From contig NIVC01000390.1 of the NCBI GenBank assembly GCA_002269645.1, forward strand, positions 248,001 through 312,000: DNA of 64,000 bases, in the 5' to 3' direction. Of this stretch, positions 641-32,163 are shown one piece after another. Source of the DNA: Macrostomum lignano. Taxonomy: Eukaryota. The number at the start of each line of letters is the position of its first letter. Positions within the stretch are counted from its first letter, which is position 1. The notes beneath the pieces were generated by a model. That model worked only from the letters and a program-made list of their open reading frames with translations. It was not told the origin of the DNA and ran no database searches. A program made the position numbers and the translations under genes.

Positions 641-652
641 TTAGCTTGTCAC

Positions 653-6071: not shown

Positions 6072-9000
6072 ATGGAGCCGCTGGATCGAGATGAATACGC
6101 CAGACGGTTTCGGGCCTCACGAAATCTGATCGTCACGGCGGCGCAGAACCGACAGCGCTACCTGCAGCAGATGGCTCGCTGCATCGACGACAGCCAGGTG
6201 GCCGTGGAACAGGCTAAGCGGAAGCACCCACGAGTGACTTTCACTCAAAGCGAGGAGGAGCTGGCCCAGGCGCGAACTCAGCTACTTAACCAGCTCCCTC
6301 TGTCCCTGATTGTATTCGGTCGAAGCAACACGGGGAAGTCGACGCTGCTGAATCAGATTCTGCGCTACTGGCCGGACCAGGACGGCGTGACACTGTTCCC
6401 AACTGCGGGCCACAACTGTTCAGCCAGGGTGGCTGTTGTCAAATACGGTCCATCCAACGAGATCCAACTTCTCAGCCTGCGTCCCAGTTCACCAATGGTG
6501 CTGGAGCAGAAGGCCTTTACGACCAGCGAGAGCATCCGAGACTTTATGGACCTCGAACATAGTCGGCGAGAAGTGGAGGAAGAGTTGTGGAAGCTGGTGC
6601 AGATTCAGCTTCCACAACCGCTGCTGCAAGGTAACCTTCAGGTCGTTGACAGTCCAGGAATGGGAGAGAATGAAGTCATGAACAAGGTGGTGAAGGAGTT
6701 TTTGTCGCGGCTAAAATCTGGCATAATTATCTACGTTGTGGACGGCATGGAAGGCTACAAGCCAAATCCGGTAAGAGTTTATCATGCTTGCATTGCTCAA
6801 ATACTCATATGAAATACTCCAAAATCGGGTGAACTTAAATATTAGTCAAGTAAGCGTCTATTAAGACGACCAATGAGCACAAGTAAAAATGAAAACCGGT
6901 TTGAATTCCCAAAAATATACACTTTTATCTACATAAATCGTCTATTTATCCGCTAGGACAAGGAAAACATCAAATTTCTGATGGAGCAATCTACTGCCCT
7001 GCAACGGCTGATCGTGGCGAATCGTATCGATTTTGACTTCGTCTCATGGTTTAACAACCAAGAATTAGATTATGACCTTGAAGAAGACCCGCTTGAAGAT
7101 GTGCTCGACGGTCTCAGGGAGGATATGGGATTCGACTACGCTGAAATTTGCGAGCAACACTCGACCAAGCAGCTTAACGCGGTAAGACAGAAAGTGAAAT
7201 ATGAACATCCAGACTACCTCACAGGTGACAGGAACGTGGAGGACTTGGTCATCGGAGTATCTGCTAAGTCGGTCAAAGATTTTATCACCAACCAGCAAAC
7301 GCTGACTCATGCTCCGTACGTGGATTCCTTCCTGCAACTGGAGAGCCGCATCGCCGCTTTGGTGTATGAGAACGGTCGTCATCATCTGCAGGATGCAGCG
7401 AGGATCGCTCAGAGGCATCTGATGCAGACTAAGACTCTATTGGCGAACTTCTATGGCGACCACTCTGAGAGGGGTCAGAAGATGATGGAGTTGCTAGAGA
7501 AAAGCATCGTGACTTTAAACGAGATTTTCCGGCAAATCTGCCTATCGCTGAACAGTGTGCTTGCATGCGACTCGCTCGACCTCGGCAACCAGAACAGCGA
7601 GCTGAACCGTCTCAAGACCCGCTTCGTGCGCGAGGACGTCCCGCCGGAACAGCAGGCCATTGACACGTCACTAATGATGCGCGAGAGCGAGGCAAGGTTC
7701 ATGGAGTCACTCATCAGAACTTCCGGGGGCAGCCGCGAAGCTAAGGTGGCTATTCGCCTGCTATGCGATTTCAAAGATACAGTTGTCAGCAGGATGCGCA
7801 CCATACTGATGTGGAACTTTAAGATGATATTTATGGTGGAAGCCAACAGACCATTGAGCAAGCTAGAATCAGATTGCAAGAAGCTCTTGGACAGCCTGAA
7901 AATGCAGTCGGCTCAATTGAGCAGCGGAAACGAATGCGAATACGTAATTGGGCTGGTAAGTTCTCAGATGCTTTCACCGAATCCGGCAGTGTTTGACCAG
8001 GTGTGCACGGAAAAGCTGACTGACTCAATGCGGCAGGCGCTTGGATCCGCCGTTCACCGAGACGAGTTCCGCCGCATCATCGATTCTCTAACGCCGCAGT
8101 TCAACCGGTCCGATGAGGAGCGCGATCGAGTGCTCACCTACTTTATGAACAACGTGGATCTGACGCAGCAGATTGCCAATGTCATTACCGAGTACAAGAA
8201 TCAAATAAAAACTCAGAAGGTAGTCGTAGAAAATCTGCTTTCAGCGCAACTTCAAAACATGCGGGAGCGAAAGACGCGGAGCCAGGAGGAGCTGGATGAC
8301 ATGCGATCGCACAACGAGAAAATGTCGGCCATGAGTTTCTACATCGATGCGCTGGTCACGGAGGCTAACTGGACGGCTGATTATGAAATCAGTGAGCAGC
8401 TTTTGGACTGTTAATTTACGAGTAGTCAATTGGCTAAACACCAGCTTTTAGCTTTCAATGGTGGAATGTAAATAAACACGGGAATCAACATCTATCAATG
8501 AGATGACTAGATAGTCTGTAGTATTTATGAATTTTTCTAGAGGGGTTGTTTAACGTCCTAAGAAACGACCTTAAATGAAGTACGTATATGGTAGCTTAAT
8601 TTGCATTTTAGCCGTCAAACTTGTATACTCGAATACTCATAAACCACGCAGGTCTGCGAGAATTCCAGGAACAACTTGCCAGCATGACGTCTTCGGTATC
8701 TCCGGAGCGACTGCAGCGTCGGCTAAAGCCAAGATTTGCCAGGTCGTGCGAACAGCACGGGGCCGGCGCTACCGCAGACCTGTTGCTGCACTACCGCCTG
8801 GTCAGGATGCAGCAGGACGATGCCAGGCGATTGGCTTCAGATGTGGCTCAAGTTGGGTTAGTGCCGATGCTTTTTAAGCTCTATGAATGGGTTTTAACAC
8901 TGCTTTGTTTAGTTATGAAATCAGCAGTCTGTTCTCTCAACTGCATTTGTTTTACGAGATAAGTTGGGGTGGTAGCCTAATGGTTAGACCGTCGGACTCA

Positions 9001-10308
9001 CAACTGCAAGGTCGGGGGTTCGATTCTCGACCCACTCGGAACAATTTGTGTCCTTCAGCCAGACACTTAAATATCTGCATTGCTTCAGTTCACCCAGCTG
9101 TAGTTCCACAGCTCTTCAGTTCACGAGCTGTAAAATGGGTGCCAGAATTAAGCTGGGGTAATTGGGGGTATGTAGGGCGACCCCCCAGTCCTTGGACCTT
9201 GGATTGAACAGCCGTACCCAGCCTTCAGATGCCCCGCGCAATAGCTGCGGCTGAGCTGTCAGTTGCTCGCCTGCCCATTGGGCAGGTGCAATCAATTATT
9301 ATTACTAAGTTGAAACATGACCCAGAATGTCTTTTGAGTCTGTTTGGCTCCTATTTCAAGGTTACGAGCGTAAAATCACTAAGGCTCTGGTTCCCAAAAG
9401 CAAGCGTAAAGTAGACGAGTAAATACGAGCATACTTGAGCAAAAAAGGTAAATTATACTTTTTTATTGAAACGATGCCTAGCATAGTAAAGGAGAAAAAA
9501 GTCTGTAAAATACGCCAAGCTTTGCTAGAATAGGCCCAGGGAAAACAGTATGCCTCTGAAATGCTCCACTCTGATCTACAGGAGTCGCCTGGCCGGGTCT
9601 GTACGCCTGAGCTGGCTCAGCCTGGCTGACAACTATCGCGCTCACATGGAGGAGCCTGAGGCCCGTTTGCTAATCGGCTTCGACGGCAATTACGTCAGCC
9701 TGGCTGAGCTCCCGCCCGGGCGCCTCACCGATGCCATCCGCCTTGTCCTACTACGGCGCCTCGTAGACTGTTGGGCCAGCCTGTCCAGCCTCGCTCACCG
9801 GCCGAGCGACTACCGGCCTTCCTGCGTCCTGCTGCGACGCCGGCATCCTGACGAAGCCGAGCAAATCCAAGACATTGACGGCCTGGCCAGCGACGAGGCG
9901 TTTGCGGACCCGACTCTGACGATCTCCTCGGAGGGCGATGCCGGGTCGCTGGCCGCCTGCGCTGCGTCGCTGTTCGTTCACGAGTGCCGCGACAAGGACA
10001 ACGATGCAGTTACCAATGCTGCCGGCTGGGACGCGAGGCAGGCCAGCGAACTCCAGCTGCTGACCGGGGATCGAGACCGCTACCTGGCCGGGCTGAGGCG
10101 CCGGCTTGTCCGAGACGGCCGGCCGGAGGGTCTCATCACCGGCGTCGTTCGCTGCGTTCGCGCCTGCCTCGAAGCCTCGAATTTAGATGCAGAATCGCTG
10201 AGCGATGGTGCCGACGAGAGAGAGCAGCTGGCAGCTTTGCGGATGAAGAAAATCCAGGAGGCGAGGGCTGAGTTACAGACGGCTGCTGGCGCCATTGAAA
10301 AGCAATGA
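6072..10308 (+). CDS. Four-exon gene (6072-6770, 6957-8391, 8652-8856, 9582-10308; 1021 aa): dynamin-like GTPase, helical region and degenerate kinase domain; DSTYK-like
   Basis: G1 GRSNTGKS, G3 DSPG, G4-like NRID. Donors GTAAGA 6771, GTGAGC 8392, GTTAGT 8857 and acceptors at 6956, 8651, 9581 give phases 0, 1, 2 and an open 3066-nt CDS. The C-terminus resembles the DSTYK kinase (KPRF, LTDAIRL, HRP, RDGRPEGL). Confidence 0.8.
8966..9306 (+). mobile_element. tRNA-derived CORE-type SINE (family B), intact copy in intron 3 of the GTPase gene
   Basis: A-box GGTAGCCTAATGG, B-box GGTTCGATTC, MIR/CORE-like TGTGTCCTT..AGACACTTAA..TTGCTTCAGTTCAC..CTGTAAAATGGG and an (ATT)n tail. A second copy is at 31955. 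Confidence 0.85.
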
Positions 10309-11395: not shown

Positions 11396-11858
11396 TTACT
11401 AAAAAATTCAACTCGTCCAGACTCACTGTTCAATAATCATGTATCAATAAAAGTTAAAATCAAGGACGACTCGTAGAAGTAAACTGACATATTTGCGAAA
11501 TGTAGCAAGGAAAAGTTTCAAAGGCCACATTTAATGGAAATCGAATAAGATTGGACTGAGAATCGGACATTATTCGATTTTTTCAGTTGTTGTCTCTATG
11601 CTTTCATCCACATCCTGGTCTCAGCTGGGCCATTTATGCGTGTACAATAAAAATTCTATTGTAATTTTACAAGCCGTGCTTAAACTGACAACTTCTTTAA
11701 GCATCTCCTATCGCCCATAGACAGGCGTCAAGTTTTCGAGTAAATGCTAATAACGCGTTTGACAATATTAGCAGCATAACAAACACCAACTAACTGACAT
11801 GGTGAATTGCAGATTGTAGCAATTTGCATTGCTATTTACCAGCCACACACGGCTAGCC

Positions 11859-12329
11859 ATGCACGGCACTGACTGTTGCGAAAACTGGCCGGAACGGGAG
11901 CAGCAAGAGCAGCTTCTGCAAGAAGACGCAGTGAACTGGAAGGACTGCATCCACCGTTGGAAGTGTAGCCGAGAGAAATGGCGCCAGGAAACGGTGAAGC
12001 TGCAAAGCCAGCTGTACGACATGACACACAGCGCCTTTCACTGGCGCAAGCAGGTCTCCATAGTCCACAGCGGGCTGACCAAGATGCACGAATCTTTGCT
12101 TAACTGGCAAGCCGAAGCTCATCGTTGTCGGGAAGCGTCGCAGCAATGGCGGAATGAGAGCTACCTGTGGCGAGAACAGGCACAGCTGTGGAAAAAGCAG
12201 TGCAGCGAGCTGATGGAGCGAGTGGACAATCATCAGATTGCTCAGCTGCACCAGGCCAGGCACCTGTATTGCGCACAGATGAGGCAGCAGTACGAAGGCC
12301 AGTCGCAGTCCTGTTGTCCGGCGCACTAA
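11859..12329 (+). CDS. Single-exon 156-aa coiled-coil protein with a tryptophan heptad repeat
   Basis: GC-rich coding-like ORF with an acceptor-like TTTACCAG about 17 nt before the ATG. Trp lies at residues 27, 34, 41, 62, 83, 97, 104 and 111, all in one heptad register. Confidence 0.75.
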   Translation: MHGTDCCENWPEREQQEQLLQEDAVNWKDCIHRWKCSREKWRQETVKLQSQLYDMTHSAFHWRKQVSIVHSGLTKMHESLLNWQAEAHRCREASQQWRNESYLWREQAQLWKKQCSELMERVDNHQIAQLHQARHLYCAQMRQQYEGQSQSCCPAH

Positions 12330-13279: not shown

Positions 13280-16200
13280 TCAAGCGCCTCGTTCGATTTG
13301 GTATCGTCCACCAGCTGGCTGGGCAGCGAATTCCATCATTTCCACCTCCGACCGCGGCTTCGGTTCCGCAGCGGCTTCGCCAGCGGCCGATTCGCTCACG
13401 GGAACGTCGTATTCCGGCTCGGCTTCCTTCGCGCCGCACGCTCCTTTCTTAGACATGCAGTTAATCAATTGTACAAGAGCTACGCCAAGAAGGATTCCTA
13501 GAATGCCAAGCAGCCCCCACAGGCCCTGAAGCTGCTGCGATGCCAGTGTTGCACTCGCAGTACTGGCTGAGGTAGGAGAGGGAGAGGCAGCCGGTTGGGT
13601 GTCGCCGGTTGCGAGGCAGGTGAGGCCGGCGCACGCTCCCTCTGCAGCCTGCTTGGTGCACCAGCCGTCGCCTCCAGCTGGTCCGGATCTGAGCTGGGAA
13701 CTCAGGGATTCGGCTGACTTGCTAAATGAAGTAGTGACTCCATTGTAGTTCCCCACCTGGGAAATTAATAAAGTCGGATTTGCATATTTTTCTAGGTAAA
13801 TGCACCTAGTATAATCTTCAAGTCCTAATCACGTCTTTGTTCAGAATCAATTTACTAACAGTATTTTTTGCTTTCTATGGGTAAGTGTGCTTTGACAGTT
13901 TTCGTTCAAATATCTTCAACGTCCTTAATTAAGTCTTCTTCAGAAGTCCTTAGGAGCCATCACTAAGTTATTCGGCTAACATCAGAATCATCGCACCTGC
14001 ACGTATCGATATCCTCCGGTGGATTCGTTGCGGTACTGCCACACAGATACAGAAAGCCGGCCCATTCGGTTTTCGAAAATCTTCTGGTAAACCCATGGCG
14101 TGCCGGCACTTGTTCCGGAGAAACGTTGCGGATCTCCTACGACTTCGGTGCCATACATAATCAGATTCGCTCGCTTTGCCTGTCCAGACTTTCCAGCTTT
14201 GTAGAATGCCGAGCACACCGGCTCACTGGTCACTGTTGAGCAGAGGTAGGTCACAGCTGTCAGCGTTCCCAAAACAAGCGTTTCAGTGGCGTGGATTACC
14301 AACGGCGTTCGGGACTCCAAGCTGTCCACCGCAACTCGACTAGCTATCACATCGCCGATGCACGGTTGGCTGTACAGCGAATTTCGAATGAACGACTTAG
14401 CAAGGTAGCACCGATTGAGGCTCTCGAAGTGCAGTCGGTCCCACTGGCTCAGCCGGTTTGGATTGGTCGGCATCGAAGCTGCCCAGTAGCGCTCGTAAGC
14501 CAGAAATGCCGGCGACTCGGCCGCTTCAAACTGCATAGACAATGCCCCAATGCCGACACTGTTGCGACCTGCATAGGCGGCTTCGGACGTGCCAACGGAC
14601 TGTGTTGTAAGAAATGTCACGTTTCCAATGTCAGTCACGACCTGGTCGTAGTTTAGAATCGCCTGAAAGCTGCTCAAATCGGCTAAAAATGGAACGTAGC
14701 GAGCTTTCGATTCACGCAGACGAGCTAGAACCACTTTTTTGCATGCATCATCACCCGTTTTGCAGTTGTGCAGGATTATCTGGCCAATGCAGAGGCCATT
14801 TTCTGGAGCGCGCTGAATCATTTCATCTTTTAGTGACGTTCCAAATGCCGTATCAACATAGACTACAACAATGTACGTCACTTTTAGATGTTTGAGTATG
14901 TTGAGCATGATCTGAACAACAGTACTTGTTGAAACTCCAGTTCGAAGTACATTAGGATATTCTGCAAAGTTGCTCAATGAGCCTGCAGTTGAGCCATATG
15001 TTATTAGAGGTAGGTTGTAGGTCTTAAGCAGCTGTGAAGCCTGAGCTGTCTGGGAGCTGCCGTGTGCGCCGACAAAGCCGACCACCTTAGTGAAATTGAA
15101 GCCGGGCGCGGAGGCCAGGGTGCCGTCCAGCAGGCTGCCCAGACGCCGCACGGTGCAGCTGGGCGAGTAGCAGGTGTCCAGCACAACGTAGCCCCAGCGG
15201 AGCTTTTTGGTGCGCCCGTCGTGAACTCGCTGCAGCAGGTCTCTCACTCCGCGCAGGAAATTTTGGTCCACTTGCGACGTGTTGAAGCCCTGTGGCATTG
15301 GAGAGCCCTGGCTCAGCGCGTCCACCAGATCGACAACGAACTTGAAGGCCATCGCAAACTCGTAGCCACCTACGTTTTGAGTTCTAAAAGTGCCGTCTTT
15401 GCAGTTAAATCGGTCATTTCCTCTGTAGAAAATTGGAATTAAAACTCCCAGGTAGATGTCTCCCTCCTTGAATTGGATGAACTGCTTCTCAGATTCGCTC
15501 ACGCACTCAGGGCAACTGGCCGGACACTCCGAGGCGGTGCTGTTGGTCTCTTTAGGGAAGATGTCCGGATTCCCGCTCGTCAGCTCGTAGAATCGGCTCC
15601 TGCCGGAGACATCCAGCTCGTAGGTCTGCGCGATTGTACCCGCCTGCCTGACGATCATCTCGCCGAGTTTCACCAGCGAGTAGCTTGTGCCGCTCAGCTG
15701 GCTCTGGTAGATCTTCGCTATTGGCTGCCAGAAGCCGCGAGTGCTGTGCTCAAGTCCTCGTTCCATCGAGTACGAGGTAAAGCCAGCCCTGATAAATGAG
15801 TCCAGAATCGTGAGATTAGTTTTCAGCGATGACAGAGTAACGGACTTTTGCCTCAGCCTCTGAATGTCAATTATCGTGCTCAAGCTCGGAACTCCATCGG
15901 CCAGAAGCGGCGCAAGGCTGAGGGCGTGAAAGTCGTAGCGAAGAGCCAGCAGGTAGCAGAGGCTGTTGGGATCCGACCAGGTGCAAAGGCTGCTCGTCGA
16001 CTGCTTGAGCGAGTTCAGCCGACTGTGGGTGTCCCGCAGCTCGGAGAAGCGGCCCATGGACGCCGGGTCGGAGGTGATGTTTGAGAACAGCAGCCGAAGC
16101 TCGTCAGTGGCGACATCGGGGTCCAGAATTCCAGGAAAGATGAAGACCGTACCAAGGGCGAGGTTCCTCCGTCGGGGAGTGTCGGACATCCGGTGGAAGC

Positions 16201-17544
16201 TGCTGAAGGCGGCGCCAACCAGCACCAGCTGGTACCGCTTTTCGGTGTCCGCGAATGCGCTGTCGCTTCCAGACACGAGGTCCCACAGGCGCAGGAAGGC
16301 CGCTCCGGAGCCGACGAAGGCCACAGTGAAGCGGGGCAGCCGCCGGCTGACGTACACGAAGTCCTTTAGTGACCGAGCAGCTTCCTTCACGTTTCTGCTG
16401 GTGAAGCTCAGCAGCAGCGGGAAGCAGACGCTACCGTCTGAGCGCCACTGCGACTGCAGCTGCTGGGACAGGCGGGTCGAGCCGGGCTCCGCCTCCCACA
16501 GGAGGCCCACGTAGCTCCAGCCGCGATCAACGAGAAAACTGTAGGTGACCTGAAGCAAACAGGTGATGCAATGACAATACGATAATAGATATTTGGTAAA
16601 ATCCCGAAATTCGTCTCTCCTTCAAAGCAGAAAAAATCAACACGTCAATCAGTCTCACATTAGACAGCTCGCTAATTGATGGCGCAGCGGTGAGCTGTCC
16701 CAACCGGTCTGTCCGAAAGAATCCTCGCTGCGTACGACCGGGGTCGCTAGTGTAGTCCGTCAGGGCGGGAAGGTAACCGGTCACTGCTGGACGCGAATTG
16801 ACAGCGTCTTCCGACTGTCCGATCAGAGTGAAGTAGGTGCTGACCGAGTTCAACTCTTCAAACTGGCTGGGCGACAGGTGCACTGGGGATGTCAATTTAC
16901 CGGGTTAATGTTTGCTTGGGGATACATTTATTAGTTCTGTGTCGAAAATTTCTTATATTCCATGGTGGTACATAGAAGTACACACAAGCGCTACAAGTTG
17001 GTCGGTTGTACAGTCAATAGCATGTCCGAGGGGTACTACGCTCGTAAACACAAAATTGAACTCACCAAATGTTTGGTTAGTCCTGGCCTTGACCTGGTCA
17101 AGTATATTCGATACCAGCTGACAGGTTTCCACTATGGAGCCGCCACGGTCTGCATCAATTTCGGAAATCTGATTTGATACTTGACCAGTAAACAGAAATT
17201 ATCGTCAGTTTTAGTGCATTGGTGCATTTTTTGCATTGCAATAAGCTCACCTCCCAATGCCTGGAACAGCATGACGTCAAGCAGAGCTTCGCCAAAGTGC
17301 AGACTCAGATCCGGCTGGAGGCTGGCTGTGCACAGACTGCCAGATGAAGCGTTCAGGTTGCGTGTGTGCTGGTACCATGGCTCCGCTGAGGCTGCATTGT
17401 TTAAATACAAGTGTATAAAACTATATTTAGAGTCAAATTTCTAGTATGAAAGGTACGAAGACATTACAAATTACCTGACGTAATAGCCAACAACAGTGCG
17501 CCAAACGCTGCACGCATTGCCAGGTTGAAGCTTAAAGCCCGCAT
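13280..17544 (-). CDS. Six-exon gene (17544-17475, 17391-17251, 17179-17066, 16882-16659, 16549-13997, 13756-13280; 1192 aa): type I membrane protein with two tandem mGluR-like Venus flytrap domains and one TM helix
   Basis: Signal peptide MRALSFNLAMRAAFGALLLAITS. The second VFT has EGDIYLGVLIP, LDTCYS, VVGFVGAHGSS, ITYGST and YVQVGNY. Single TM LWGLLGILGILLGVALVQLI. All splice phases are consistent (3579 nt), though one acceptor is a weaker AAG. Confidence 0.82.
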
Positions 17545-19024: not shown

Positions 19025-19092
19025 CTATTTTCCCAGCCTGCCAGACCGCCTGCCCCTTCGGTCAGCTGACAATTTGCGAGCGCGTCGAAACA

Positions 19093-19123
<31 letters not shown>

Positions 19124-22100
19124 GCTGCCGGGACACTCGCGCTGCCGGACGCATGCGCCGTTGTACAGCTGGCGGCGGCCCCGACAGACGCAGCCCGGTC
19201 GGCAAGGCTGCGGACAAGCCGGCTGGTGCGACCGGGGCAGCCGGTGCCCGCAGCGGGACTGACAGGCGCAGTCGGAGTAGCGGAAGCCGCGCGGGCACAC
19301 CTTGTTGGCGCCGGTGCACGGGAACTGAGCGAGGTCCAGCACCGGCGACTTCTTGCGGGCGCACAGCTTCAGCACGGTGCGCACCACCGGGCAGATGCAC
19401 TTCGTGACGCTGTCCCGGTGGCATTTGCACATCTCCTCGACGCACCAGCTGAAATTTCGCGGAAGCCATGGAGATAAAGCATTTGAGTATACGAGCTTGA
19501 TTCAAATTCATGAGCCTAACTCCAGTGACTCAATAAATTCGATGAATTGCATGTCAACGGGAAAGTCAGGAGCGCCTGCACGGCCGGCGGGTGTTTAATA
19601 GCTTTGGTAAGACGGTGAAAAGGACGGTGATTGGAAGTGACGACTCGTCACGTTGTAGTCCCCTACTCGGATTCCGCCAAATACCGCACGCAAATTTGGC
19701 GTTCGTGCCCTTGCGTCGCGGGGGTACTTGTACATACCCAGACGATGAAAAAGCTAGAGCACCCTCTGTGTTAGCTTGTGCCTGCGTAAATATCTGCGCG
19801 AGTATGACTGTCACTTTGGTTTGCGATTGCACCCCAAACTATCAATAATTAACTAGCTAAAAGAAACTAAAATTAAAAAACCCGCGCCAGCCTACTTGTA
19901 GTAGGGCGTCATGTTGACTGCGCCGGCGCACTCGAGCCGGCGGAGAGGGCGGCAGTACTGCCGGGCCCAACGGCGTTGCCGCCCGTTCAGCAGGCAGTTG
20001 CTCTTAGTCCGATGGTCGGCTCTGCAGAAGCCTTCGCGCCAGGCCCGCGTGAACTCCCGCTGCGAGTGGAACATCTCGCCGTTGACGCCGAGCGAGTCGT
20101 CGTCCGACCTGCCGTTGTAATTTCCGCAGAGGCCGCACAGGTAGCCGCCGAGGCTCTTCGGCGCCTGAACTTCTAGGAAGCTGCGGCCGTCCCAGACTAT
20201 ACGAACGCCGTTTAGTAGACGCACCTGGACGAATGAAATTAAACGGGACAACTTGTAGTTTACACAGAGTTTAGACAGCAGGGACAATTAGTTTGTGCGT
20301 TTCGCAGTTTATGGAAATTTATTAAAAGGTATAATTTTGCTTCAAAATTCATAGGCTAGATAGACCTAGACAATTTTTAGGTTTTATCACTTAAATGAGC
20401 TACTTTCTCACTTTTTAAGGTTGCGAATATACGAGCGTATTTTGAAGTCAGGGCTGAAGTGCCTCAATTTTTTTAAATTAGTTCAGAAAAAAATACCATG
20501 GAGACGGGCAAACAAACAAAATTTAGCCAAATATTGTTGCTCCTCCTTTCTATTTTTTAATCAACCTTCAATCAATTTAGGAAGCATAAAAAGATTTACT
20601 GAAGTGCTGCGGCCACCTACCGCAACGCCTTCAGGGACATTGTCCCAAACAATCTTCCCGCGACAATACTGTGCGCAGACACGCACTGATACACACGCTC
20701 ACACAGGATGTACATCAGCCCTGACTTTCTAAACATCAGGCATGTACACTCTCTGTGCCTTGAAGGTTGGCTCACATGGCTGTGAATTGCAAGACAACCC
20801 CGGCCAAAGTGGATGCGAACTTGAAAGTCAAAATGGAGCCTGCAGCATTGATTTCTTTACGCCAATTCCTTCATTTGGAGCTTCAAATGCTTAAATTACG
20901 AGATTACCGTGATAAACCCTTTTCTATTTTTTTGAAGAATAGGATCGATAGTAATGTTCTTTTATGCCCCCATTATGTATCTCTTAATAATGTTTATGTT
21001 ATTCCCCCACCCCAGCTCTCATTGTGTTTTTCCCCCGCCTTGACAGAGACATACATGGCGTCAAGGGGGTTTGTAACACACATTTTAGACAGACGACTTC
21101 TACGAGCGGAGGTTAACCCGACGTTTTGAGACGGAGAACTACCTTCTTGACGAAAAAATACGCTGAAAGAAGTCCCCGAGACATTTGAGACTTTGATATG
21201 CGTAAAACCACAGCTTAAATCGTTCAAATAATACAGGAAGGTTTCCAATCGCATGAAATCCCCATTTATCCCATAAAGATCTCGGGTTTTCAGCATAACG
21301 GGAGCTTTTTGGCTCCAAATGAAGGGATTGGCTTAGAGAAATTGGAACCCAATGCTTCAGGCTCCATTTTGACTCGTAAGTTCAACATCCCCTTTTCTTG
21401 CTCAAGCTCCCAACTAATGTGCCCGCGCACGGCATCGAATCAGGGGTCCTGTCAGACGCGTTTGCCGCTGAGCTGGTCTGCCCCTGAGAAGGTGAAAAAT
21501 AATAGTTTTCAAACGCATCTGAACCGGATTCGAACACTATCGACAATAGTAACCTTACGTGCTCGTGATACAGGATTTTGAAGCTTGTCTTTACTCTTAC
21601 TGCTCACCTGCAAGTAGCCGTTCAGCGTAGCGACAGAGAGCCAGCCGCCGTTGCGAATGCTGCCCAGGCTGATGCGGCGGCCGTTGAGTCGCAGCTTGAA
21701 GCCGGCCCCGACACTCAGCCGGTTGCGCAGGATGGCGATCTGCAGCGCCCGGCCACGCCTGCCGTACGCAAAGCGAATGCGGAACTTCGAATAGCGTTCG
21801 ACGCACAGCTTAACCAGGGTATACCTGCACCGTTCTCGCATGTGCACTATGCTGGCATCGAAGGTGCGCAGCAGCGGCCGACCGAGCACCGAGCAGGAGC
21901 CGAACTTCTCCACGCACTGGGGGCAGCACTGGCCTGGCCGAGTCTCCAGCTCATAGCCAGGCGCGCATCCGTTGCGCTGATCGGCGCAGTCTGGCTTGCG
22001 GCACGAGATCTGTCCGGCGCGGCAGATGCAGTGCGAACAGGTGTCCGGCTGCCACTGGGCCGCGTGCTGCGGAAGTGAATGAGTTGGGACAGACACAGGG

Positions 22101-25100
22101 CGTGGGATTTTTCTGTTAGTTAGTTAGTGGATCGGTTTGTATCTGCTATGACCATTCCGCTGCCCCCCGAGCGGGCACACAATAAGGGCGAGAATCGCCC
22201 GACAAGCCTTAGGCCAATTTTCGGAATCCAACCCGGGGGCACTTTGCGCAAGAGTTATCTGTCAGCGATCTACGCTCGTACGTTGTCTCTGAGTTCTCCT
22301 CTGAGCAAGCCAAGTAAGTGAAACTGTCTTCTGTTCTTGATCGACGGGGAAAGTATTGATTTTTAGGATTAGTGCCAACTCCCATATTGTAACTTACAGC
22401 AATGTAACTTAGTTCTACCAGCGATCGAGTTCAGCTCGTTAGTCGCTTATCAGTCATTAAGAAGTTGCACTTCTATCCCAGACTGACGGGTTAAGAATCA
22501 GGCCAACTACCAGTTGCTTGAAATTGCTGAATCAGCTTACAATGTAATCTTGGCTTGGCCTTCCTTGTACTCGTCCTTCCCCGGTGATTAAACAGAGTTG
22601 AGTTGAAGCGCTCACTACTAGTAGCATAGGCGCCTTCCACTTGCAACATGGCACAGGCTCATGCCTTAATGAGGCCTCCGCGCCCCACCCCCAACCCCCC
22701 CCCCCCTGAACCAGGCAGTTCATGGGGTCAGTCAGCGGTCGCAATCAACGAGCAATTTCGTCGCATTCATTCGGCATCCCCAGCAGCTGCCCAGCGGCTC
22801 TCCCCACCTAACCCGAAGAAGCAGCTGTCGAAAGGCTGCAAAGCAAACAGTGCGCGCTTGCCGACGGATGGTAGAAGAAATCCTGGCCAGCCTCCCCTAG
22901 CTTAGTAAGGAGAGCTGCTGCAAAGTGTAAATTTGCCTCAAACCCCTTCCCGACCACCGAAGCGGGTGTCGAGCTTTACCAGCTTTGCGCAAAGACTGAG
23001 GGCCGGCGGACTTAGTTAAAACAAACTCTCTCTCTCTCTTGTCGAGTGCGTGCGAAAAATTAGCCGCCCACCCCCTGCTGCGCAAGCGATTTTAAAGCCC
23101 AATAATCCAAGTCGCCGCGCGTGAGCCACCTGGTGCGCATTCCCCCTGTGCCTCATAGTTATGCCTATTATTTTATGGCCCGAGCCTGACTTTGTAGCGG
23201 CTTTTTTAGGCTCATTATAAATTTCTTACCTACTTACGACTAGATGTGAGCGGGCGGTGGCCTTTGGTGGAAGGCTCCTTGACCCTGTGCAGGGTGTACA
23301 CAAATACATTTATACTGTGCCTTGGGTTGCCTCAGGGTGATTGCGCCAGCAAAACAGACCCGTTGTACAGCTACCAGAGTCTTCAGGTGCCCTGGTCTTT
23401 CGCTATTCTACATGTAGCTCTCTTTTCAAAATCCAGTCGCCAATAGTCATCAATAGGTGTTAATGTCCAGCTGAAGTTATTGTGTGTTCCAATTAGCCTC
23501 TGAAGCTAGAAATTCACTTGAATAGTCAAAAGCTCAGTGCAATGTGGGGACCAACTGTGTCAGGTTTTTACATTGAGAAGGCGCTGCCGGGACATGACAG
23601 AATGACGTAAACTGATGGAACATTAGCAAAATATTTGCTTAGATGAAACACGGCAGCGGATTGGTCGATTAGCGAAAGCAACTGGAAGAGATTTTTGCAA
23701 GACAGCCGATTCCAAGAATCACAAATGCAGGCCGTAGGCTCTATTTCGGCTTCATTCGATGCTTCATCTCTCGGCCATCGCGGGACGGGCGGCCCCGTCA
23801 GGACCGGGGGCTGAAGTCATTCTTACCTTGTACCGCCTGCCGCTCGGGTCCACGCAGTCCCGGCTGTCGCGACACACCGGACAGCAGTCGCCCTTCGGCT
23901 GGAAGTAATCCTTCTCGGCGCATTCCAGCACCGGACAGTTCTGGCGTCGGCACACAATGGTCCCGTGCTGCGGGAGGGGACAGACAGGGATAGGAGGCAG
24001 CGCCGCGTCAGGTTGGGAAAACTATACGGTCTAAATGGATCCTTGAGTGGCCCTCCGCGGGTGGTGGAGGGGGCCCGCTAATGGCCGGCCCTTGGCATCA
24101 TCAACAACATCAGGGGGGGGATAGCGGAGCGGGCGGAGACGGAATTCCAGACCAGATCGGAATCCCTTAAGTGGCTCCCCCATCTTTCCGCTTGTCCGGC
24201 CGCTGTGTCTCTCATGTTGGCAGCCGGCCACCGGGCCCGTGGACCCTCCTGCGGGTCCGGTGTTTACATTAGTAGCAGCATTTGCCACGCAGCCTCAAAT
24301 CCCCCCGCCGCCGCCGTCACCGGCCAGTGGTTAATTTTCGATGTAGCCGCATTTAGCTTATTTAGCTAAGGCTAAGAATAAAGCTATAATCAACAGTAAA
24401 CTCTCGAATATTTTTCAGGCGTTCAAGAGTATGCTCCAATTTCTTGAATCGTAAAATAAAAGTAAATTCGAAAAAGAAAATTGCATCAGTTCAAGCCGTT
24501 ACATTTTTAATGTTGCTGGTTTGACTGACCTTGAAACAACTAGTTTCGTAATTTTTGTTTAAAATTGTCGCTTGCTGCTCTTTTGTCTAGCTAGAGCACC
24601 TTCAATGGCTGAAGAGAAGCTGAAAGGGGCTGCACAAGGAGTGCTGAACAGGGAGTGCTGAACAGGGAGTGCTGAACAAGGAGTGCTGAACAGGGAGTGC
24701 TGCACAAGGAGTGCTGAACAGGGAGTGCTGCACAAGGAGTGCTGAACAGGGAGTGCTGAACAGGGAGTGCTGAACAGGGAGTGCTGAACAGGGAGTGCTG
24801 AACAGGGAGTGCTGCACAAGGAGTGCTGAACAGGGAGTGCTGCACAAGGAGTGCTGAACAGGGAGTGCTGAACAGGGAGTGCTGAACAGGGAGTGCTGAA
24901 CAGGGAGTGCTGAACAGGGAGTGCTGCACAAGGAGTGCTGAACAGGGAGTGCTGCACAAGGAGTGCTGAACAGGGAGTGCTACACAAGGAGTGCTGAACA
25001 GGGAGTGCTGCACAAGGAGTGCTGAACAGAGAGTGCTGAACAGGGAGTGCTGAACAGGGAGTGCTGAACAGAGAGTGCTGAACAGAGAGTGCTGAACAGG

Positions 25101-28100
25101 GAGTGCTGGACAGGGAGTGCTGAACAGGGAGTGCTGAACAGGGAGTGCTGAACAGGGAGTGCTGAACAGGGAGTGCTGGACAGGGAGTGCTGAACAGAGA
25201 GTGCTGAACAGGGAGTGCTGAACAGAGAGTGCTGAACAGAGAGTGCTGAACAGGGAGTGCTGGACAGGGAGTGCTGAACAGGGAGTGCTGAACAGGGAGT
25301 GCTGAACAGGGAGTGCTGGACAGGGAGTGCTGAACAGGGAGTGCTGAACAGGGAGTGCTGAACAGGGAGTGCTGGACAGGAGTCGCTGTAAAGAGATTTG
25401 AGTGCTGTACGGGGGGTGCATGGCCTGTTAACTTGTGTGGGCGACTCGTAATAAAACGATTCGCGCGATGCCGTCTCAGCGAAGATTATTAAAGCATAGA
25501 AAATTTTTATATAGCAGCTTCTTGTCAGTATTGTGTGCTTTGAGAAGGCTAGGCCTCAGCTAAGCTACACATCACTGGAGCACACAATAAAAGGCTTTGT
25601 AGCAATAAATTTGCAGCATAAACCAGCATAAGCCTCAACAGTTTACAACCGCGCCGCCTTGCAAAAGAGAAAGCGAAAAAGCGCAGCAGCAGATGAAAGA
25701 GACTAAAAAGCGATTAAACAGACCCTCATTAAAACCAAAACATGGGAGGCTGTTGAAACTGGTGTGGACATATTCATATTAAACAGTCCTATCAACCACT
25801 TGAGCATTTTTGAGACAACAACCTGCCTGTCTATCCGGTGAAGAGGCTCTGAGAACGCGTCGCTAAGTCGCTTAGATTCTCGGGTCAATCTCAGGGGTCA
25901 AGAGATCCATTTTGACTCACCCGGCACGAGCAGTCGGTGCATCGGTCAACACTCCAAGCCGTAGTGTTTGAGTAGGTTTGGCCCTGGAACAGGCACTGCT
26001 GCTCGGCGGGCTTCGCTCGAGCCTCGGCGCCTGAAACGGCTGAAAACGGACAGAATGGGACCGAAGTGGCCTCAGTTGGCAGTGATAGAAATAGCGATGG
26101 GTTAAAGTTATTAAAACCACTGGCAAGCGGTGGGGTTAAATCAACCGATTGTGCCAGGAAAGGGTCGAATATTTTGGGATAGGATTAGTCGGAGCGGGAT
26201 TCGGCCATTTTCACCGATAATTTAGGTAGGACAAGGGCTAGGCCAACTCCATCCGGTCCTTCGGCCCCCATAACTTCACAATAGCAATCATTTATCTACG
26301 GAAACGAGTATGTAGCTTTTGAGCTATTTTTACTTGAAGAAACATTTTGAACTTTCGACTCTTTAACGGTTTTTTCTCGTTCCTGCCATCCCGGACAACT
26401 TTGAACGCTTGTGGAATGGCTACCTGAAAAGTAATATTGAAAAAAACTTTTTCCTGATTCTAGTTTGCTATATGATCCAAACCTGATGCACACCTAACAC
26501 CTGGTGGATTAATGATTAGTAGAACCTTCACCTGGCTCACTAGCTTGTTTTCTGTGAGTTCTCTAGGCAGTCCTAAGGGATTGCTAGACTGACGCATGGC
26601 CTTGGATACCTGTGGAGTATCAGGTGATTCTGGCTACGGTTCCGAGGGATGGGGCTACCTACTGACCTATAACAGAGTATACGGCCAGTCCAGCGAGCAG
26701 TTCATGAACCTTTGCCTGTGCACTTGGGTTCGGGGCCCGCTTTAGCCGTGCCTCCCCGATGCATCCGCACTAAATCCGAGCAAAACTAAAGTTATCAACT
26801 GTACTACTCTCACCTGAGCACGCGAGACAATGCCCGCTGTGGGTCTGCTCAGCTGGCGGACAGTTCACCAGCTGGCAGGCGTCCTTGAAGCAGCTCAGCA
26901 TGCCGCCCTCGCAGCGACAGACAACCGACTGGTCTTCGAATGGCCGAACGTTCTGATCAGGACTGACCAGCATGTTCTTCACAGTGCAGCCGAAGCAGCT
27001 GAAACGGTTGATGATGGATCGGAGTCGCTTTCAAGAGCAGCTTCAGGCAACAGGAAATTCCTGCAAACTATTCGCTAATTCAAAATTCATTCCCGAGGAC
27101 GAAGGCCCGGCCATTATTTTTGATGATCTTAAAAACAGCTCTGTCCCTCTCTCTGCCCCGGTCCCTTCCCGGCATCACAGGAGAAAATGCAAAATGCAAA
27201 GGTGTTGATAAAGCTCAGGTGGAGGCTTCAGCAGTTCCGCTTTAATCATCGGAGCTCCCGAGGAAAAGCTCCCTTCCCGAGGAGATGAGGCCGGCAGGAA
27301 AGAAACGCGAGTATGTCGTAATTGACAGCCAGCCCATGCAGCCGGGCTCTGGGGGACTGCTGTATTCCTATTTCAACTCCCTTAAGACCTTCCGCCTGCT
27401 TCGTTAAAATATTTTAGCAAAAAAGCCTCTTGCATGGACTCAAAGAGGCCTCTGGATTTTACTGACTGGCCAACCGAAGCATTTATGTTTTAGATCAAAG
27501 GAATGCGCTCTTAGATTAAATATCTACGCATTTAGACTAGAGATTTACACATTTAGACTAGAGATCTACGCATTTAGACAAGAGATCTACACATTTAGAC
27601 TAGAGATCTACGCATTTAGACAAGAGATCTACACATTTAGACTAGAGCTCTACGCATTTAGACTAGAGCTCTACGCATTTAGACTAGAGATCTACGCATT
27701 TAGACTAGAGCTCTACAAATTTAGACTAGAGATCTACGCATTTAGACTAGAGCTCTACAAATTTAGACTAGAGATCTACGCATTTAGACTAGAGATCTAC
27801 CCATTTAGACTAGAGATCTACAAATTTAGACTAGAGATCTACGATTTAGACAAGAGATCTACACATTCACGCCCTAAAAATCTACACATTTAGACTAGAG
27901 ATCTGCACCTTTAGACTAGAGATATATGCATTTAGACTAGAAATCTACACATTAAGACTAGAAATCTAAGCATTCAGACTAGAGATCTACGCATTTAGAC
28001 GAGAGACCTACACCCAGCAGAACTGCAGAAAGCGCCCTAATCAGACATCTGTGCATGAAGTAACTACTTATCAAATAAAACACCATAGCACCCATTCGCG

Positions 28101-31954: not shown

Positions 31955-32163
31955 GTAGCCTAGTGATTAGAGCGTCGGACTCACGACATGAAGGTCGGGG
32001 GTTCCATTACCGATCCCACTGGAACTATTTGTGTCCTTGAGCAAGACACTTAACTCTGCATTGCTTCAGTTCACCCTGCTGTAAAATGGGTGCCAGCATT
32101 AGCAGGGGTAATTGAGGGTGTGTGTGGTGACCCCACAGTTCTTGGACTGAACATCCGTACATC
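31955..32163 (+). mobile_element. CORE-type SINE (family B), 5' part, interrupted by a LINE
   Basis: tRNA-like head and the CORE block TGTGTCCTTGAGCAAGACACTTAACTCTGCATTGCTTCAGTTCACCCTGCTGTAAAATGGG at 32030-32090; colinear with 8966-9215. Confidence 0.85.

What the first reader, a model, noticed from the sequence alone, without database searches (positions are those of the whole stretch)
13280..17544. Class C GPCR ectodomains in tandem on a single-pass receptor with no 7TM
Seen: signal peptide, a degenerate VFT1, a CPASCPEC linker, an mGluR-like VFT2, a second short Cys linker (WCTKQAAEGACAGLTC), a Ser/Thr/Ala stalk, one TM and a short tail, then a stop. There is no nine-Cys domain, 7TM, guanylyl cyclase or ion-channel domain. 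VFT2 keeps the Ser (GAHGSS) and Thr (YGST) that bind amino-acid ligands in mGluRs; VFT1 does not. Known: flytraps normally sit on 7TM, iGluR or guanylyl cyclase receptors. Inference: an undescribed amino-acid or chemosensory receptor, co-receptor or decoy class.
Basis: partly seen in the sequence, partly recalled or inferred. Interest (0 to 1): 0.8.

Follow-up and report, generated by a model that had tools for sequence, protein, structure and literature searches.

The report
Tandem flytrap single-pass receptor, flatworm
This is a real flatworm (Macrostomum lignano) gene for a membrane protein with two glutamate-receptor-type "Venus flytrap" ligand-binding modules on one membrane helix, and it belongs to a large, unnamed family of such receptors in molluscs, brachiopods and this flatworm for which I found no published study.

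Summary
Window 17544-13280 (minus strand) holds an intact six-exon gene. Its spliced product is identical to GenBank protein BOX15_Mlig025594g1 of Macrostomum lignano (1182 aa). Its parts, in order:
- signal peptide
- degenerate VFT1
- CPASCPEC linker
- mGluR-like VFT2
- second 3-Cys linker
- Ser/Thr/Ala/Pro-rich stalk
- one TM helix
- 57-aa tail

It has no NCD3G, 7tm_3, kinase or cyclase domain. No class C 7TM coding potential exists anywhere in the 64 kb.

It is not a one-off. Of the 150 best representatives from a 1.84-billion-protein search, 42 share the architecture 2 x VFT + 1 TM with the same two Cys linkers. All 27 that I looked up come from molluscs or Lingula, and every one is labelled "uncharacterized". 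Relatives in a nemertean and in amphioxus carry 2-5 VFTs on a 7tm_3 domain.

Most family members keep the five-residue amino-acid-binding signature in both VFTs. This gene has lost it entirely in VFT1. Its VFT2 reads S-T-T-F-Q, against S-T-D-Y-E in its paralogues, so an ordinary alpha-amino acid is an unlikely ligand. The tail carries EPEYDVPV, one instance of a YxxP motif enriched across the family.

I found no paper describing the family. Verdict: new variant of a known kind, interest about 0.6.

The parts
13280..17544 (-). Whole gene, ATG to stop. Six coding exons: 17544-17475, 17391-17251, 17149-17066, 16882-16659, 16549-13997, 13756-13280. Encodes the 1182-aa protein BOX15_Mlig025594g1.
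   Evidence: Spliced translation identical to P0001. All introns GT..AG. Annotated the same way on NIVC01000390.1.
17387..17544 (-). Signal peptide, aa 1-25. The span includes intron 1 (17474-17392).
   Evidence: N-terminal hydrophobic stretch ending in an ASA motif. Read directly from the sequence.
15554..17386 (-). VFT1, aa 26-505: degenerate distal flytrap. Lobe 2 is well preserved (aa 168-312, window 16676-16133). Lobe 1 is poorly modelled. All five amino-acid signature positions are lost.
   Evidence: hhalign against family VFT1: probability 98%, E=1.7e-13. AF2 pLDDT 78-89 in lobe 2 only. Foldseek top 50 hits are all class C receptor flytraps, E about 3e-8, TM 0.29-0.38. Alignment A3.
15503..15526 (-). 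Linker 1, CPASCPEC (aa 515-522): a 3-Cys mini-linker between VFT1 and VFT2.
   Evidence: C515, C519 and C522 are invariant in all 20 sequences of alignment A2 and in A3/A4.
13724..15481 (-). VFT2, aa 530-1035: mGluR-like membrane-proximal flytrap. The span includes intron 5 (13996-13757).
   Evidence: Pfam ANF_receptor 1e-23. PDB mGluR4 1.6e-16. AF2 pLDDT 70-88. Foldseek TM-score 0.82-0.84 to mGluR1/2/3/5/8 ectodomains.
14600..15058 (-). VFT2 pocket positions, given by mGlu1 equivalent: S165 = S671 (15058-15056), T188 = T694 (14989-14987), D208 -> T714 (14929-14927), Y236 -> F742 (14845-14843), D318 -> Q823 (14602-14600).
   Evidence: HMMER alignment to mGluR4. Family alignments. The five-residue signature is as listed in PMC2680970.
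13616..13660 (-). Linker 2, CTKQAAEGACAGLTC (aa 1057-1071): second 3-Cys mini-linker, between VFT2 and the stalk.
   Evidence: C1071 is invariant; C1057 and the C1064 column are nearly invariant in A2. The same motif precedes the TM in family members.
13529..13615 (-). Stalk rich in Ser, Thr, Ala and Pro (aa 1072-1100).
   Evidence: 72% S/T/P/A.
13454..13522 (-). Single transmembrane helix (aa 1103-1125).
   Evidence: The only strong internal hydrophobic segment, Kyte-Doolittle 2.35. AF2 helix 1099-1126.
13283..13453 (-). Cytoplasmic tail, 57 aa (aa 1126-1182). The stop codon follows at 13282-13280.
13397..13420 (-). EPEYDVPV (aa 1137-1144, Tyr1140): juxtamembrane acidic-Tyr-x-x-Pro motif, a candidate phosphotyrosine/SH2 docking site.
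   Evidence: YxxP occurs in the first 60 tail residues of 26 of 46 family members, against 6.7 +/- 2.3 in shuffled tails (maximum 17 in 2000 shuffles). Pro at +3 is the outlier among all 20 residues.
15003..16554 (-). Gene-conversion tract shared with paralogue P0002, about 190 kb away on the same contig. It covers VFT1 lobe 2, linker 1 and the first ~150 aa of VFT2.
   Evidence: 94% nt identity over 1556 nt, with flanks that blastn cannot align. 95-100% aa identity against 20-50% outside the tract. Core dS 0.05 and whole-tract dS 0.126, against saturation outside.
16982..17065 (-). In-frame 84-nt extension of exon 3 that would result if a weak GTAC donor at 16981 were used instead of GTGAGT at 17065 (+28 aa). 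Probably intronic.
   Evidence: Both donors keep the frame. The annotated protein uses 17065. The P0002 locus has a stop two codons after the equivalent donor. Another M. lignano model, P0004, carries a comparable insertion.

Best explanation
The locus is an intact gene for a type I membrane glycoprotein. It is a divergent flatworm member of an unnamed family of tandem Venus-flytrap single-pass receptors derived from class C (mGluR-type) ectodomains and found in molluscs, a brachiopod and this flatworm.

Proposed working, with shown and inferred steps marked:
1. Shown: the ectodomain is two stacked flytraps, each followed by a conserved 3-Cys linker.
2. Inferred: each linker is tied by a disulfide to the conserved lobe-2 Cys (VCFP C215 in VFT1, GLCIGQ C760 in VFT2). 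This would mirror the lobe-2 to cysteine-rich-domain disulfide that couples flytrap closure to the effector in mGluRs. The ectodomain would then be a rigid relay.
3. Shown: VFT1 has lost every ligand-signature residue. Inferred: it serves as a structural, assembly or protein-binding module, like the N-terminal domain tier of iGluRs.
4. Shown: VFT2 is a well-formed mGluR-like clamshell. It keeps the residues equivalent to mGlu1 S165 and T188 but has T, F and Q in place of D208, Y236 and D318. Inferred: VFT2 is the ligand site, and the ligand is a small carboxylate-bearing molecule other than a free alpha-amino acid. The sister genes P0002 and P0152 (S-T-D-Y-E) remain amino-acid-type sensors.
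5. Inferred: the protein acts as a flytrap-mediated dimer, as class C receptors do.
6. Inferred: output passes through the single helix to a short tail. Its conserved acidic-Tyr-x-x-Pro motif (EPEYDVPV) would be phosphorylated by a cytoplasmic Src- or Abl-type kinase and would then recruit an SH2 adaptor of the Crk/Nck type. On this view it is a kinase-less, G-protein-independent sensor.
For: Real, intact gene:
- Exact match to the annotated protein.
- Canonical splice sites.
- dN/dS about 0.2-0.25 in the tract shared with P0002.

Family membership:
- 42 sequences with 2 x VFT + 1 TM among the 165 held, which are the 150 best representatives plus cluster members.
- Invariant linker cysteines C515/C519/C522 and C1071.
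- The best non-Macrostomum hits of VFT2 are the second flytrap of 2 x VFT + 1 TM proteins, and no first flytrap of such a protein appears in the 45 hits listed.
- VFT1 matches family VFT1 (E=1.7e-13) better than family VFT2 (E=1.4e-4).
- Pfam shows ANF_receptor x2 and nothing else in members P0019 and P0022.

Flytrap folds.

Pocket residues. The family signature is intact in 31/42 VFT2 and 27/42 VFT1 domains.

Disulfide bookkeeping: VFT1 plus linker 1 holds 8 Cys, an even number, which fits three intradomain or linker pairs plus one lobe-2 to linker bridge. C215 and C760 are invariant.

Tail motif: 26/46 observed against 6.7 expected.

Topology: ten N-glycosylation sequons, all in the predicted ectodomain.
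Against: - No expression, localisation, ligand or phosphorylation data are available here.
- Lobe 1 of VFT1 is modelled at pLDDT below 50, and the Foldseek TM-scores for VFT1 are only 0.29-0.38. VFT1 may be only partly folded as a flytrap.
- The two other M. lignano paralogues lack an exact YxxP (EYANNE, SDYAYG), and 20 of 46 family tails lack it. Tyrosine signalling therefore cannot be universal.
- YxxP as an SH2 or kinase motif is a consensus argument from vertebrate proteins, not a test.
- VFT2 with T/F/Q could equally be ligand-dead.
- VFT2 plus linker 2 holds 13 Cys, an odd number, so one Cys (for example C638) is unaccounted for.
Confidence: 0.5

Rival explanations
1. Non-signalling ligand sink, decoy or dominant-negative partner. 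The protein binds a ligand, or a 7TM class C subunit through flytrap-flytrap dimerisation, and only buffers, clears or blocks it. Precedents are NPR-C and truncated mGluR or GABA-B1 ectodomain isoforms. The short tail would serve only trafficking.
For: The tail is short (57 aa) and has no catalytic domain. There is a flatworm precedent for a 7TM-less membrane-associated mGluR flytrap that binds glutamate, SmGBP (PMC3206071). Tails differ greatly in length and sequence across the family, from 15 to 752 aa.
Against: A juxtamembrane YxxP motif is enriched about four-fold over shuffled tails across molluscs, the flatworm gene included, which argues for a cytoplasmic interaction. The two-tier ectodomain and both Cys linkers are kept with high fidelity across phyla, which is more than a sink would need. 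No 7TM partner has been identified.
Confidence: 0.25
2. Obligate heteromer subunit. This copy has a crippled VFT2 pocket. It would pair with a pocket-competent paralogue such as P0002, as GABA-B1/B2 or T1R3 do with their partners. One subunit would bind ligand and the other would tune or transmit.
For: P0001 has S-T-T-F-Q whereas P0002 and P0152 have S-T-D-Y-E. A conversion tract keeps aa ~170-670 nearly identical between P0001 and P0002 (VFT1 lobe 2, linker 1 and the N-terminal part of VFT2 lobe 1). Everything from the Ser loop onward has diverged.
Against: The only evidence is sequence pattern. Gene conversion needs no functional reason. The dimer interface was not mapped. No co-expression data are available.
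Confidence: 0.15
3. Adhesion or matrix/protein-binding molecule. The flytraps would have been co-opted for protein-protein contacts, as in the N-terminal domains of iGluRs, with no small-molecule ligand.
For: VFT1 lacks every ligand-signature residue and VFT2 lacks three of five. Among M. lignano paralogues the degenerate VFT1 lobe 2 region is at least as conserved as VFT2: P0001 against P0152 is 42-58% versus 30-55%.
Against: Most family members keep complete amino-acid signatures in both flytraps. The sister genes keep it in VFT2. S165 and T188 are retained here.
Confidence: 0.07
4. Annotation artefact or decaying pseudogene: a class C GPCR whose 7TM exons were missed or lost recently.
For: Relatives with 2-5 flytraps on a 7tm_3 domain and the same linkers exist.
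Against: - The reading frame is open across six exons with consensus splice sites.
- After the TM helix there is a 57-aa tail and then a stop.
- The next genes downstream are convergent on the other strand, leaving about 950 bp between them.
- No 7tm_3-like sequence occurs in any frame of the 64 kb: no tblastn hit better than E=0.55 and best HMM hit E=0.095, below the inclusion threshold.
- Three paralogues and 42 of the sequences held from other phyla end the same way.
- Purifying selection acts in the shared tract.
Confidence: 0.03

Closest known systems
Metabotropic glutamate receptors / class C GPCRs (Pfam ANF_receptor + NCD3G + 7tm_3)
   Same: VFT2 is an mGluR-type flytrap: E=1.6e-16 to mGluR4 and TM-score 0.82-0.84 to mGluR ectodomains. 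It has cysteines at the alignment positions I assign, from memory of the mGluR1 disulfides, to C67-C109, C378-C394 and C432-C439, plus the lobe-2 Cys in G-x-C-I. S165 and T188 equivalents are kept.
   Different: No nine-Cys NCD3G domain; there is only a 3-Cys linker. No 7tm_3; there is a single TM helix. A second, distal flytrap is present. D208, Y236 and D318 equivalents are T, F and Q.
Unnamed 2 x VFT + 1 TM 'uncharacterized proteins' of molluscs and Lingula (e.g. XP_062604070 Saccostrea, XP_067663582 Haliotis, XP_013382567 Lingula, XP_005105500 Aplysia)
   Same: Same order of parts: signal peptide, VFT1, C-x(2-4)-C-x2-C, VFT2, 3-Cys linker, stalk, one TM, variable tail that often carries YxxP. 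The linker cysteines are invariant. VFT1 pairs with VFT1 and VFT2 with VFT2.
   Different: Only 16-20% identical overall. In the flatworm genes VFT1 is degenerate, whereas 27/42 family VFT1 domains keep the full amino-acid signature. This copy has also lost three of five signature residues in VFT2.
Multi-flytrap class C GPCRs of a nemertean (XP_074641006, 5 x VFT + 7tm_3) and amphioxus (XP_035696128, 2 x VFT; XP_035691717, 3 x VFT)
   Same: Tandem ANF_receptor modules joined by the same short Cys linkers. No NCD3G.
   Different: They end in a 7tm_3 domain; this protein ends in one helix.
SmGBP, truncated metabotropic glutamate receptor of Schistosoma mansoni (PMC3206071)
   Same: A flatworm, membrane-associated, mGluR-like flytrap without cysteine-rich domain or 7TM. 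It is a precedent for 7TM-less class C flytraps in Platyhelminthes.
   Different: SmGBP is 488 aa with a single flytrap and no C-terminal TM helix or tail. It keeps Arg, Ser, Thr, Tyr and Asp and binds glutamate.
Venus kinase receptors (VKR; PMC2680970, PMC3703292)
   Same: An invertebrate receptor, flatworms included, with an extracellular flytrap, one TM helix and tyrosine-based signalling.
   Different: VKR has one flytrap and an intracellular insulin-receptor-like tyrosine kinase domain. No kinase domain is present here.
NPR-C (natriuretic peptide clearance receptor) - own knowledge
   Same: ANF_receptor-fold ectodomain, one TM helix, short non-catalytic tail.
   Different: NPR-C has a single flytrap that binds a peptide at the dimer interface. 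Here the 60 listed PDB matches (of 90 at E<=0.01) are all mGluR or T1R, with no natriuretic peptide receptor among them.
BvgS/EvgS bacterial sensor kinases (PMC4352136, PMC5573083)
   Same: Two flytraps in tandem outside the membrane, on one TM helix.
   Different: Bacterial, with a different periplasmic-binding-protein class of flytrap and a histidine-kinase output. This is an analogy only.

Membership tests
Class C GPCR (glutamate family) | ANF_receptor-type Venus flytrap | tested here: met
   Pfam PF01094 E=1e-23 in VFT2. Foldseek TM-score 0.82-0.84 to mGluR ectodomains.
Class C GPCR (glutamate family) | Nine-cysteine domain (NCD3G) | tested here: not met
   No NCD3G hit at E<=10. There are only 3 Cys between VFT2 and the TM helix.
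Class C GPCR (glutamate family) | 7tm_3 heptahelical domain | tested here: not met
   One hydrophobic segment after VFT2, then a stop. No 7tm_3-like coding potential in the 64-kb window. The downstream genes are convergent.
Tandem-VFT single-pass family (unnamed; molluscs, Lingula) | Two ANF_receptor-type flytraps in tandem | tested here: met
   VFT2 directly. VFT1 by hhalign to family VFT1, probability 98%, E=1.7e-13, and by Foldseek class C hits. VFT1 is degenerate and its lobe 1 is poorly modelled.
Tandem-VFT single-pass family (unnamed; molluscs, Lingula) | C-x(2-4)-C-x2-C linker after each flytrap | tested here: met
   C515/C519/C522 and C1071 are invariant; C1057 and the C1064 column are nearly invariant in A2.
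Tandem-VFT single-pass family (unnamed; molluscs, Lingula) | Single C-terminal TM helix and non-catalytic tail | tested here: met
Tandem-VFT single-pass family (unnamed; molluscs, Lingula) | Juxtamembrane YxxP motif (present in about 57% of members) | tested here: met
   EPEYDVPV at aa 1137-1144. Family count 26/46 against 6.7 expected. Absent from paralogues P0002 and P0152.
Tandem-VFT single-pass family (unnamed; molluscs, Lingula) | Five-residue amino-acid signature (mGlu1 S165, T188, D208, Y236, D/E318) in the flytraps | tested here: not met
   VFT2 reads S-T-T-F-Q and VFT1 has none. The family has it in 31/42 VFT2 and 27/42 VFT1 domains. It is typical of the family rather than universal.
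Venus kinase receptor | Intracellular tyrosine kinase domain | tested here: not met
   No kinase hit in Pfam at E<=10; the tail is 57 aa.
Receptor guanylyl cyclase / NPR | Guanylate cyclase domain, or a natriuretic-peptide-type ectodomain | tested here: not met
   No cyclase domain. The 60 listed PDB sequence matches are all mGluR or T1R.
Ionotropic glutamate receptor | Lig_chan pore domain with S1/S2 ligand-binding domain | tested here: not met
   No Lig_chan or SBP_bac_3 hit. Only one TM helix.
SmGBP-type truncated mGluR | Single flytrap of about 490 aa with no C-terminal TM helix; binds glutamate | tested here: not met
   The architecture differs: 1182 aa, two flytraps and a C-terminal TM helix. 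Sequence relatedness to SmGBP was not tested because no SmGBP sequence was available.

The most novel reading that the evidence does not exclude
The tandem-flytrap single-pass proteins are a distinct metazoan receptor class. They would sense amino acids or metabolites with two stacked class C flytraps. They would signal without G proteins or an intrinsic kinase, through a phosphotyrosine YxxP docking site that recruits Crk/Nck/Abl-type SH2 proteins. In M. lignano the family would have specialised into a pocket-altered subunit (this gene) and pocket-competent subunits (P0002, P0152) that work as heteromers. A gene-conversion tract would keep their shared scaffold identical while the ligand pocket diverges.
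Probability: 0.2. Interest if true: 0.8.

Novelty: new variant of a known kind. Interest (0 to 1): 0.6.

Why it matters
Class C flytraps are the textbook amino-acid and nutrient sensors, and almost everything known about how they transmit closure comes from 7TM receptors.

This family has dozens of sequence clusters in molluscs, a brachiopod and a flatworm. It stacks two such flytraps on a single helix with a conserved Tyr-x-x-Pro tail. That would be a second, G-protein-independent way of reading out flytrap closure. It would also be an unexplored set of candidate chemosensory or nutrient receptors in animals of aquaculture, neurobiology (Aplysia, Lymnaea) and regeneration research (Macrostomum).

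The same search showed class C GPCRs with up to five flytraps in a nemertean and amphioxus. These use the same mini-linkers instead of the nine-Cys domain. Flytrap-to-effector coupling through a minimal 3-Cys module is therefore directly testable.

M. lignano can be made transgenic (own knowledge), so the gene is experimentally tractable.

Tried and rejected
1. Word-indexed homologue search. It returned only the M. lignano proteins for the full-length query, nothing for VFT1 alone and three proteins for the family profile. The exhaustive HMMER search was what revealed the family.
2. A 1210-aa model using a GTAC donor at 16981 (+28 aa). I rejected it in favour of the GTGAGT donor at 17065. That donor reproduces the deposited protein exactly, and the P0002 locus has a stop just after the equivalent donor.
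3. Hidden 7TM exons. tblastn with eight class C 7TM regions and an HMM built from them, run against all six frames of the window, gave nothing better than E=0.55 (tblastn) and E=0.095 (HMM).
4. Pfam on the isolated upstream exons and on the full protein at E<=10. Nothing appeared beyond ANF_receptor and Peripla_BP_6.
5. Literature. I searched for phrases for tandem, double or multiple flytraps and ANF_receptor domains, for flytraps in Lophotrochozoa, for the three M. lignano locus tags, and for Branchiostoma plus Pfam names. The searches found only SmGBP, VKR and bacterial BvgS/EvgS.
6. Checking the proposed lobe-2 to linker disulfides in the AF2 models was not possible, because no coordinates are exposed.
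7. An endocytic YxxPhi reading of the tail motif was rejected, because position +3 is Pro rather than a bulky hydrophobic residue.

Full report
**What is at the locus**

On the minus strand, an ATG at 17544 opens a six-exon reading frame. An in-frame TAG lies six codons upstream of it. The exons are 17544-17475, 17391-17251, 17149-17066, 16882-16659, 16549-13997 and 13756-13280, ending in TGA at 13282-13280. All five introns are GT..AG and measure 83-240 nt.

The spliced product is identical, residue for residue, to GenBank protein BOX15_Mlig025594g1 of the free-living flatworm Macrostomum lignano (P0001, 1182 aa). The window is 100% identical to contig NIVC01000390.1 of assembly GCA_002269645.1 over the 5001 nt compared.

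**Anatomy**

The protein has these parts, from N- to C-terminus:
- A signal peptide (aa 1-25).
- A 480-aa region that Pfam does not recognise (VFT1).
- CPASCPEC (aa 515-522).
- A flytrap that Pfam calls ANF_receptor at E=1e-23 (VFT2, aa 530-1035).
- CTKQAAEGACAGLTC (aa 1057-1071).
- A stalk that is 72% Ser/Thr/Pro/Ala.
- One hydrophobic helix (aa 1103-1125).
- A 57-aa tail.

All ten N-glycosylation sequons lie in the predicted ectodomain.

*VFT2.* Its closest solved relatives by sequence are mGluR4, 7, 1 and 6, with E down to 1.6e-16. An AlphaFold2 model built on a 20-sequence family alignment has pLDDT 70-88 across VFT2. It superposes on mGluR1, 2, 3, 5 and 8 ectodomains at TM-score 0.82-0.84.

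*VFT1.* It is a true but degenerate flytrap.
- A profile of the M. lignano VFT1 regions matches a profile of family VFT1 domains at 98% probability, E=1.7e-13, over 212 columns. The match to family VFT2 is much weaker (E=1.4e-4).
- The VFT1-only model is confident only in lobe 2 (aa ~168-312, pLDDT 78-89).
- All 50 top Foldseek hits of that model are class C receptor flytraps (49 mGluR entries and 2 calcium-sensing receptor entries), with E about 3e-8 but TM-scores of only 0.29-0.38.

**No 7TM**

- Pfam finds no NCD3G, 7tm_3, kinase, cyclase or channel domain at E<=10.
- The deposited annotation places the next two genes downstream on the opposite strand. They are a 156-aa protein (window ~11859-12329) and a Dynamin_N protein (window ~6072-10308). 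Only about 950 bp lie between the convergent 3' ends.
- tblastn with eight class C 7TM regions, and an HMM built from them, find nothing in any frame of the 64 kb.

**It belongs to a family**

An exhaustive HMMER search of 1.84 billion representative proteins gave 785 hits at E<=1e-3.

- 42 have two full flytraps followed by a single TM helix. They are 918-1829 aa long.
- I looked up 27 of these. All are from bivalve or gastropod molluscs or from the brachiopod Lingula. The molluscs are Saccostrea, Haliotis, Solemya, Patella, Bulinus, Lymnaea, Potamilus, Dreissena, Batillaria, Aplysia, Pecten, Sinanodonta, Mya, Mactra and Mytilus.
- Every one is named 'uncharacterized' or 'hypothetical'.
- Pfam sees ANF_receptor x2 and nothing else in two of them.
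- In a 20-sequence alignment the linker cysteines are invariant (C515, C519, C522, C1071) or nearly so (C1057 and the C1064 column). So are the lobe-2 cysteines C215 and C760 and several intradomain cysteines: C633, C887, C943 and C952 invariant, C556 and C903 nearly so.
- The best non-Macrostomum matches of VFT2 are the second flytrap of 2 x VFT + 1 TM proteins. No first flytrap of such a protein appears among the 45 hits listed.

Related proteins carry more flytraps on a 7tm_3 domain, again with the short Cys linkers and no NCD3G. These are five flytraps in the nemertean Tubulanus, and two or three in amphioxus.

M. lignano has at least two further paralogues with the same architecture, P0002 and P0152/P0003.

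**Ligand pocket**

The five main residues that hold the alpha-amino-acid moiety in mGlu1 are S165, T188, D208, Y236 and D318 (PMC2680970).

| Flytrap | Residues at the five positions | Source |
|---|---|---|
| P0001 VFT2 (this gene) | S671, T694, T714, F742, Q823 | |
| P0002, P0003/P0152 VFT2 | S-T-D-Y-E | |
| Family VFT2 | canonical S-[TS]-D-[YF]-[DE] in 31 of 42 | |
| Family VFT1 | canonical in 27 of 42 | |
| All M. lignano VFT1 | none of the five kept | |

The three positions that hold the alpha-amino group in mGlu1 are replaced in this copy.

**Tail**

I aligned the tails of 46 family members. A Tyr-x-x-Pro motif lies 9-44 residues into the extracted tail in 26 of them.
- Shuffled tails give 6.7 +/- 2.3, with a maximum of 17 in 2000 shuffles.
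- Pro at +3 stands out from all other residues: 26, against 9 or fewer for any other.
- Two flavours occur: Y-[IL]-x-P-[IVT] and [IV]-Y-[DENA]-E-P.
- This gene has EPEYDVPV, with Tyr1140.

From general knowledge, YxxP is the Abl-type substrate consensus and the docking motif of Crk, Nck and Abl SH2 domains. YDVP is the repeated motif in the p130Cas substrate domain. This link is an inference, not a test. The other two M. lignano paralogues have acidic-Tyr motifs without the Pro.

**Most likely mechanism**

The steps that are shown:
- Two stacked flytraps, each followed by a conserved 3-Cys linker.
- A lobe-2 Cys in each flytrap, in the G-x-C-I context. In mGluRs, from my own knowledge of the mGlu2 and mGlu3 literature, the Cys in this context bonds to the cysteine-rich domain.
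- An even number of Cys (8) in VFT1 plus linker 1.

The steps that are inferred:
- Each flytrap is disulfide-tied to its linker, which makes a rigid relay.
- The protein dimerises through its flytraps, as class C receptors do.
- VFT2 is the ligand site and VFT1 is a structural or assembly tier.
- Rearrangement is passed through the single helix to Tyr1140, which is phosphorylated by a cytoplasmic kinase and recruits an SH2 adaptor.
- Because the amine-binding residues are gone, this copy's ligand is probably not a free alpha-amino acid. The sister copies look amino-acid-competent.

I put about 0.9 on 'real gene, member of this family' and about 0.35 on the tyrosine-signalling output. The combined confidence given is 0.5.

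Rivals are a decoy or clearance role (0.25), an obligate heteromer subunit (0.15), an adhesion or protein-binding role (0.07) and an artefact or pseudogene (0.03).

**Comparison with what is known**

- Class C GPCR: it fails two of three defining features (NCD3G and 7tm_3), so it is not a member.
- VKR: no kinase domain.
- Receptor cyclases: no cyclase domain.
- iGluR: no pore domain.
- SmGBP-type truncated mGluR: SmGBP has a single flytrap and no C-terminal TM helix (PMC3206071).
- Bacterial BvgS/EvgS have tandem flytraps on one helix, but that is an analogy only.
- Eight literature searches found no description of the tandem single-pass family or of the multi-flytrap 7TM receptors. The library covers open-access papers only, so this is not proof of absence.

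**Verdict**

The architecture is real and apparently undescribed in the literature. It is a family trait across at least three phyla, not a peculiarity of this locus. The 'amino-acid receptor' reading fits the sister genes better than this one. I rate it a new variant of a known kind, with interest 0.6.

Noticed in passing
window 16554-15003 versus L002 14156-15707: A ~1.55-kb gene-conversion tract links this gene and its paralogue P0002, which lies about 190 kb away on the same contig. It begins within 5 nt of the 5' boundary of exon 5. The core is 97-99% identical (dS 0.05, dN 0.011), while the flanking coding sequence is 20-55% identical with saturated dS. The tract ends just after the Ser loop of the VFT2 pocket, so the two genes share a scaffold but differ in pocket residues.
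   Followed up: yes
window 17065 versus 16981 (exon 3 donor): Two in-frame donors exist: GTGAGT at 17065 (the annotated form) and GTAC at 16981 (+28 aa). The longer form would supply a hydrophobic strand (DQLVALVLHLSP) that aligns with the family's IIGIIGPE strand. Another M. lignano model, P0004, has a comparable insertion. The P0002 locus, however, has a stop right after its equivalent donor.
   Followed up: partly
P0005 (Tubulanus), P0011 and P0037 (Branchiostoma); also P0007, P0009, P0015, P0017 and others: Class C GPCRs with two to five tandem ANF_receptor flytraps ahead of a 7tm_3 domain. They lack NCD3G and are joined by the same 3-Cys linkers. They are annotated 'uncharacterized' or 'mGluR3-like', and I found no literature on them.
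   Followed up: partly
window 38-642, 24629-25380, 27511-28011, 43152-43678, 44437-45059, 47993-49010, 50098-52845, 53371-53678, 57167-57710, 60884-61398: The window is dense with minisatellite arrays of 14-33-nt units. Examples are a 16-mer x118 at 50955-52845 and a 22-mer x46 at 47993-49010. These account for the strong local GC and AT skews in the composition profile.
   Followed up: no
window 6072-10308 (+) and 11829-12329 (+): The convergent downstream neighbours are a 1021-aa Dynamin_N-family GTPase gene and a 156-aa Gln/Trp-rich protein, which is probably a coiled coil. Upstream on the same strand (about 19025-27544) is a VWC/VWD-domain gene.
   Followed up: no
window 32001-38000: A stretch with markedly higher G+C (0.58-0.64) than the rest of the window (0.41-0.54).
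   Followed up: no
P0001 aa 161-520 versus 521-1040, compared with P0152: Among the M. lignano paralogues, the ligand-dead VFT1 lobe 2 and C-terminal part is at least as conserved (42-58% identity) as the ligand-type VFT2 (30-55%). This hints at a constrained non-ligand role such as protein contacts.
   Followed up: partly
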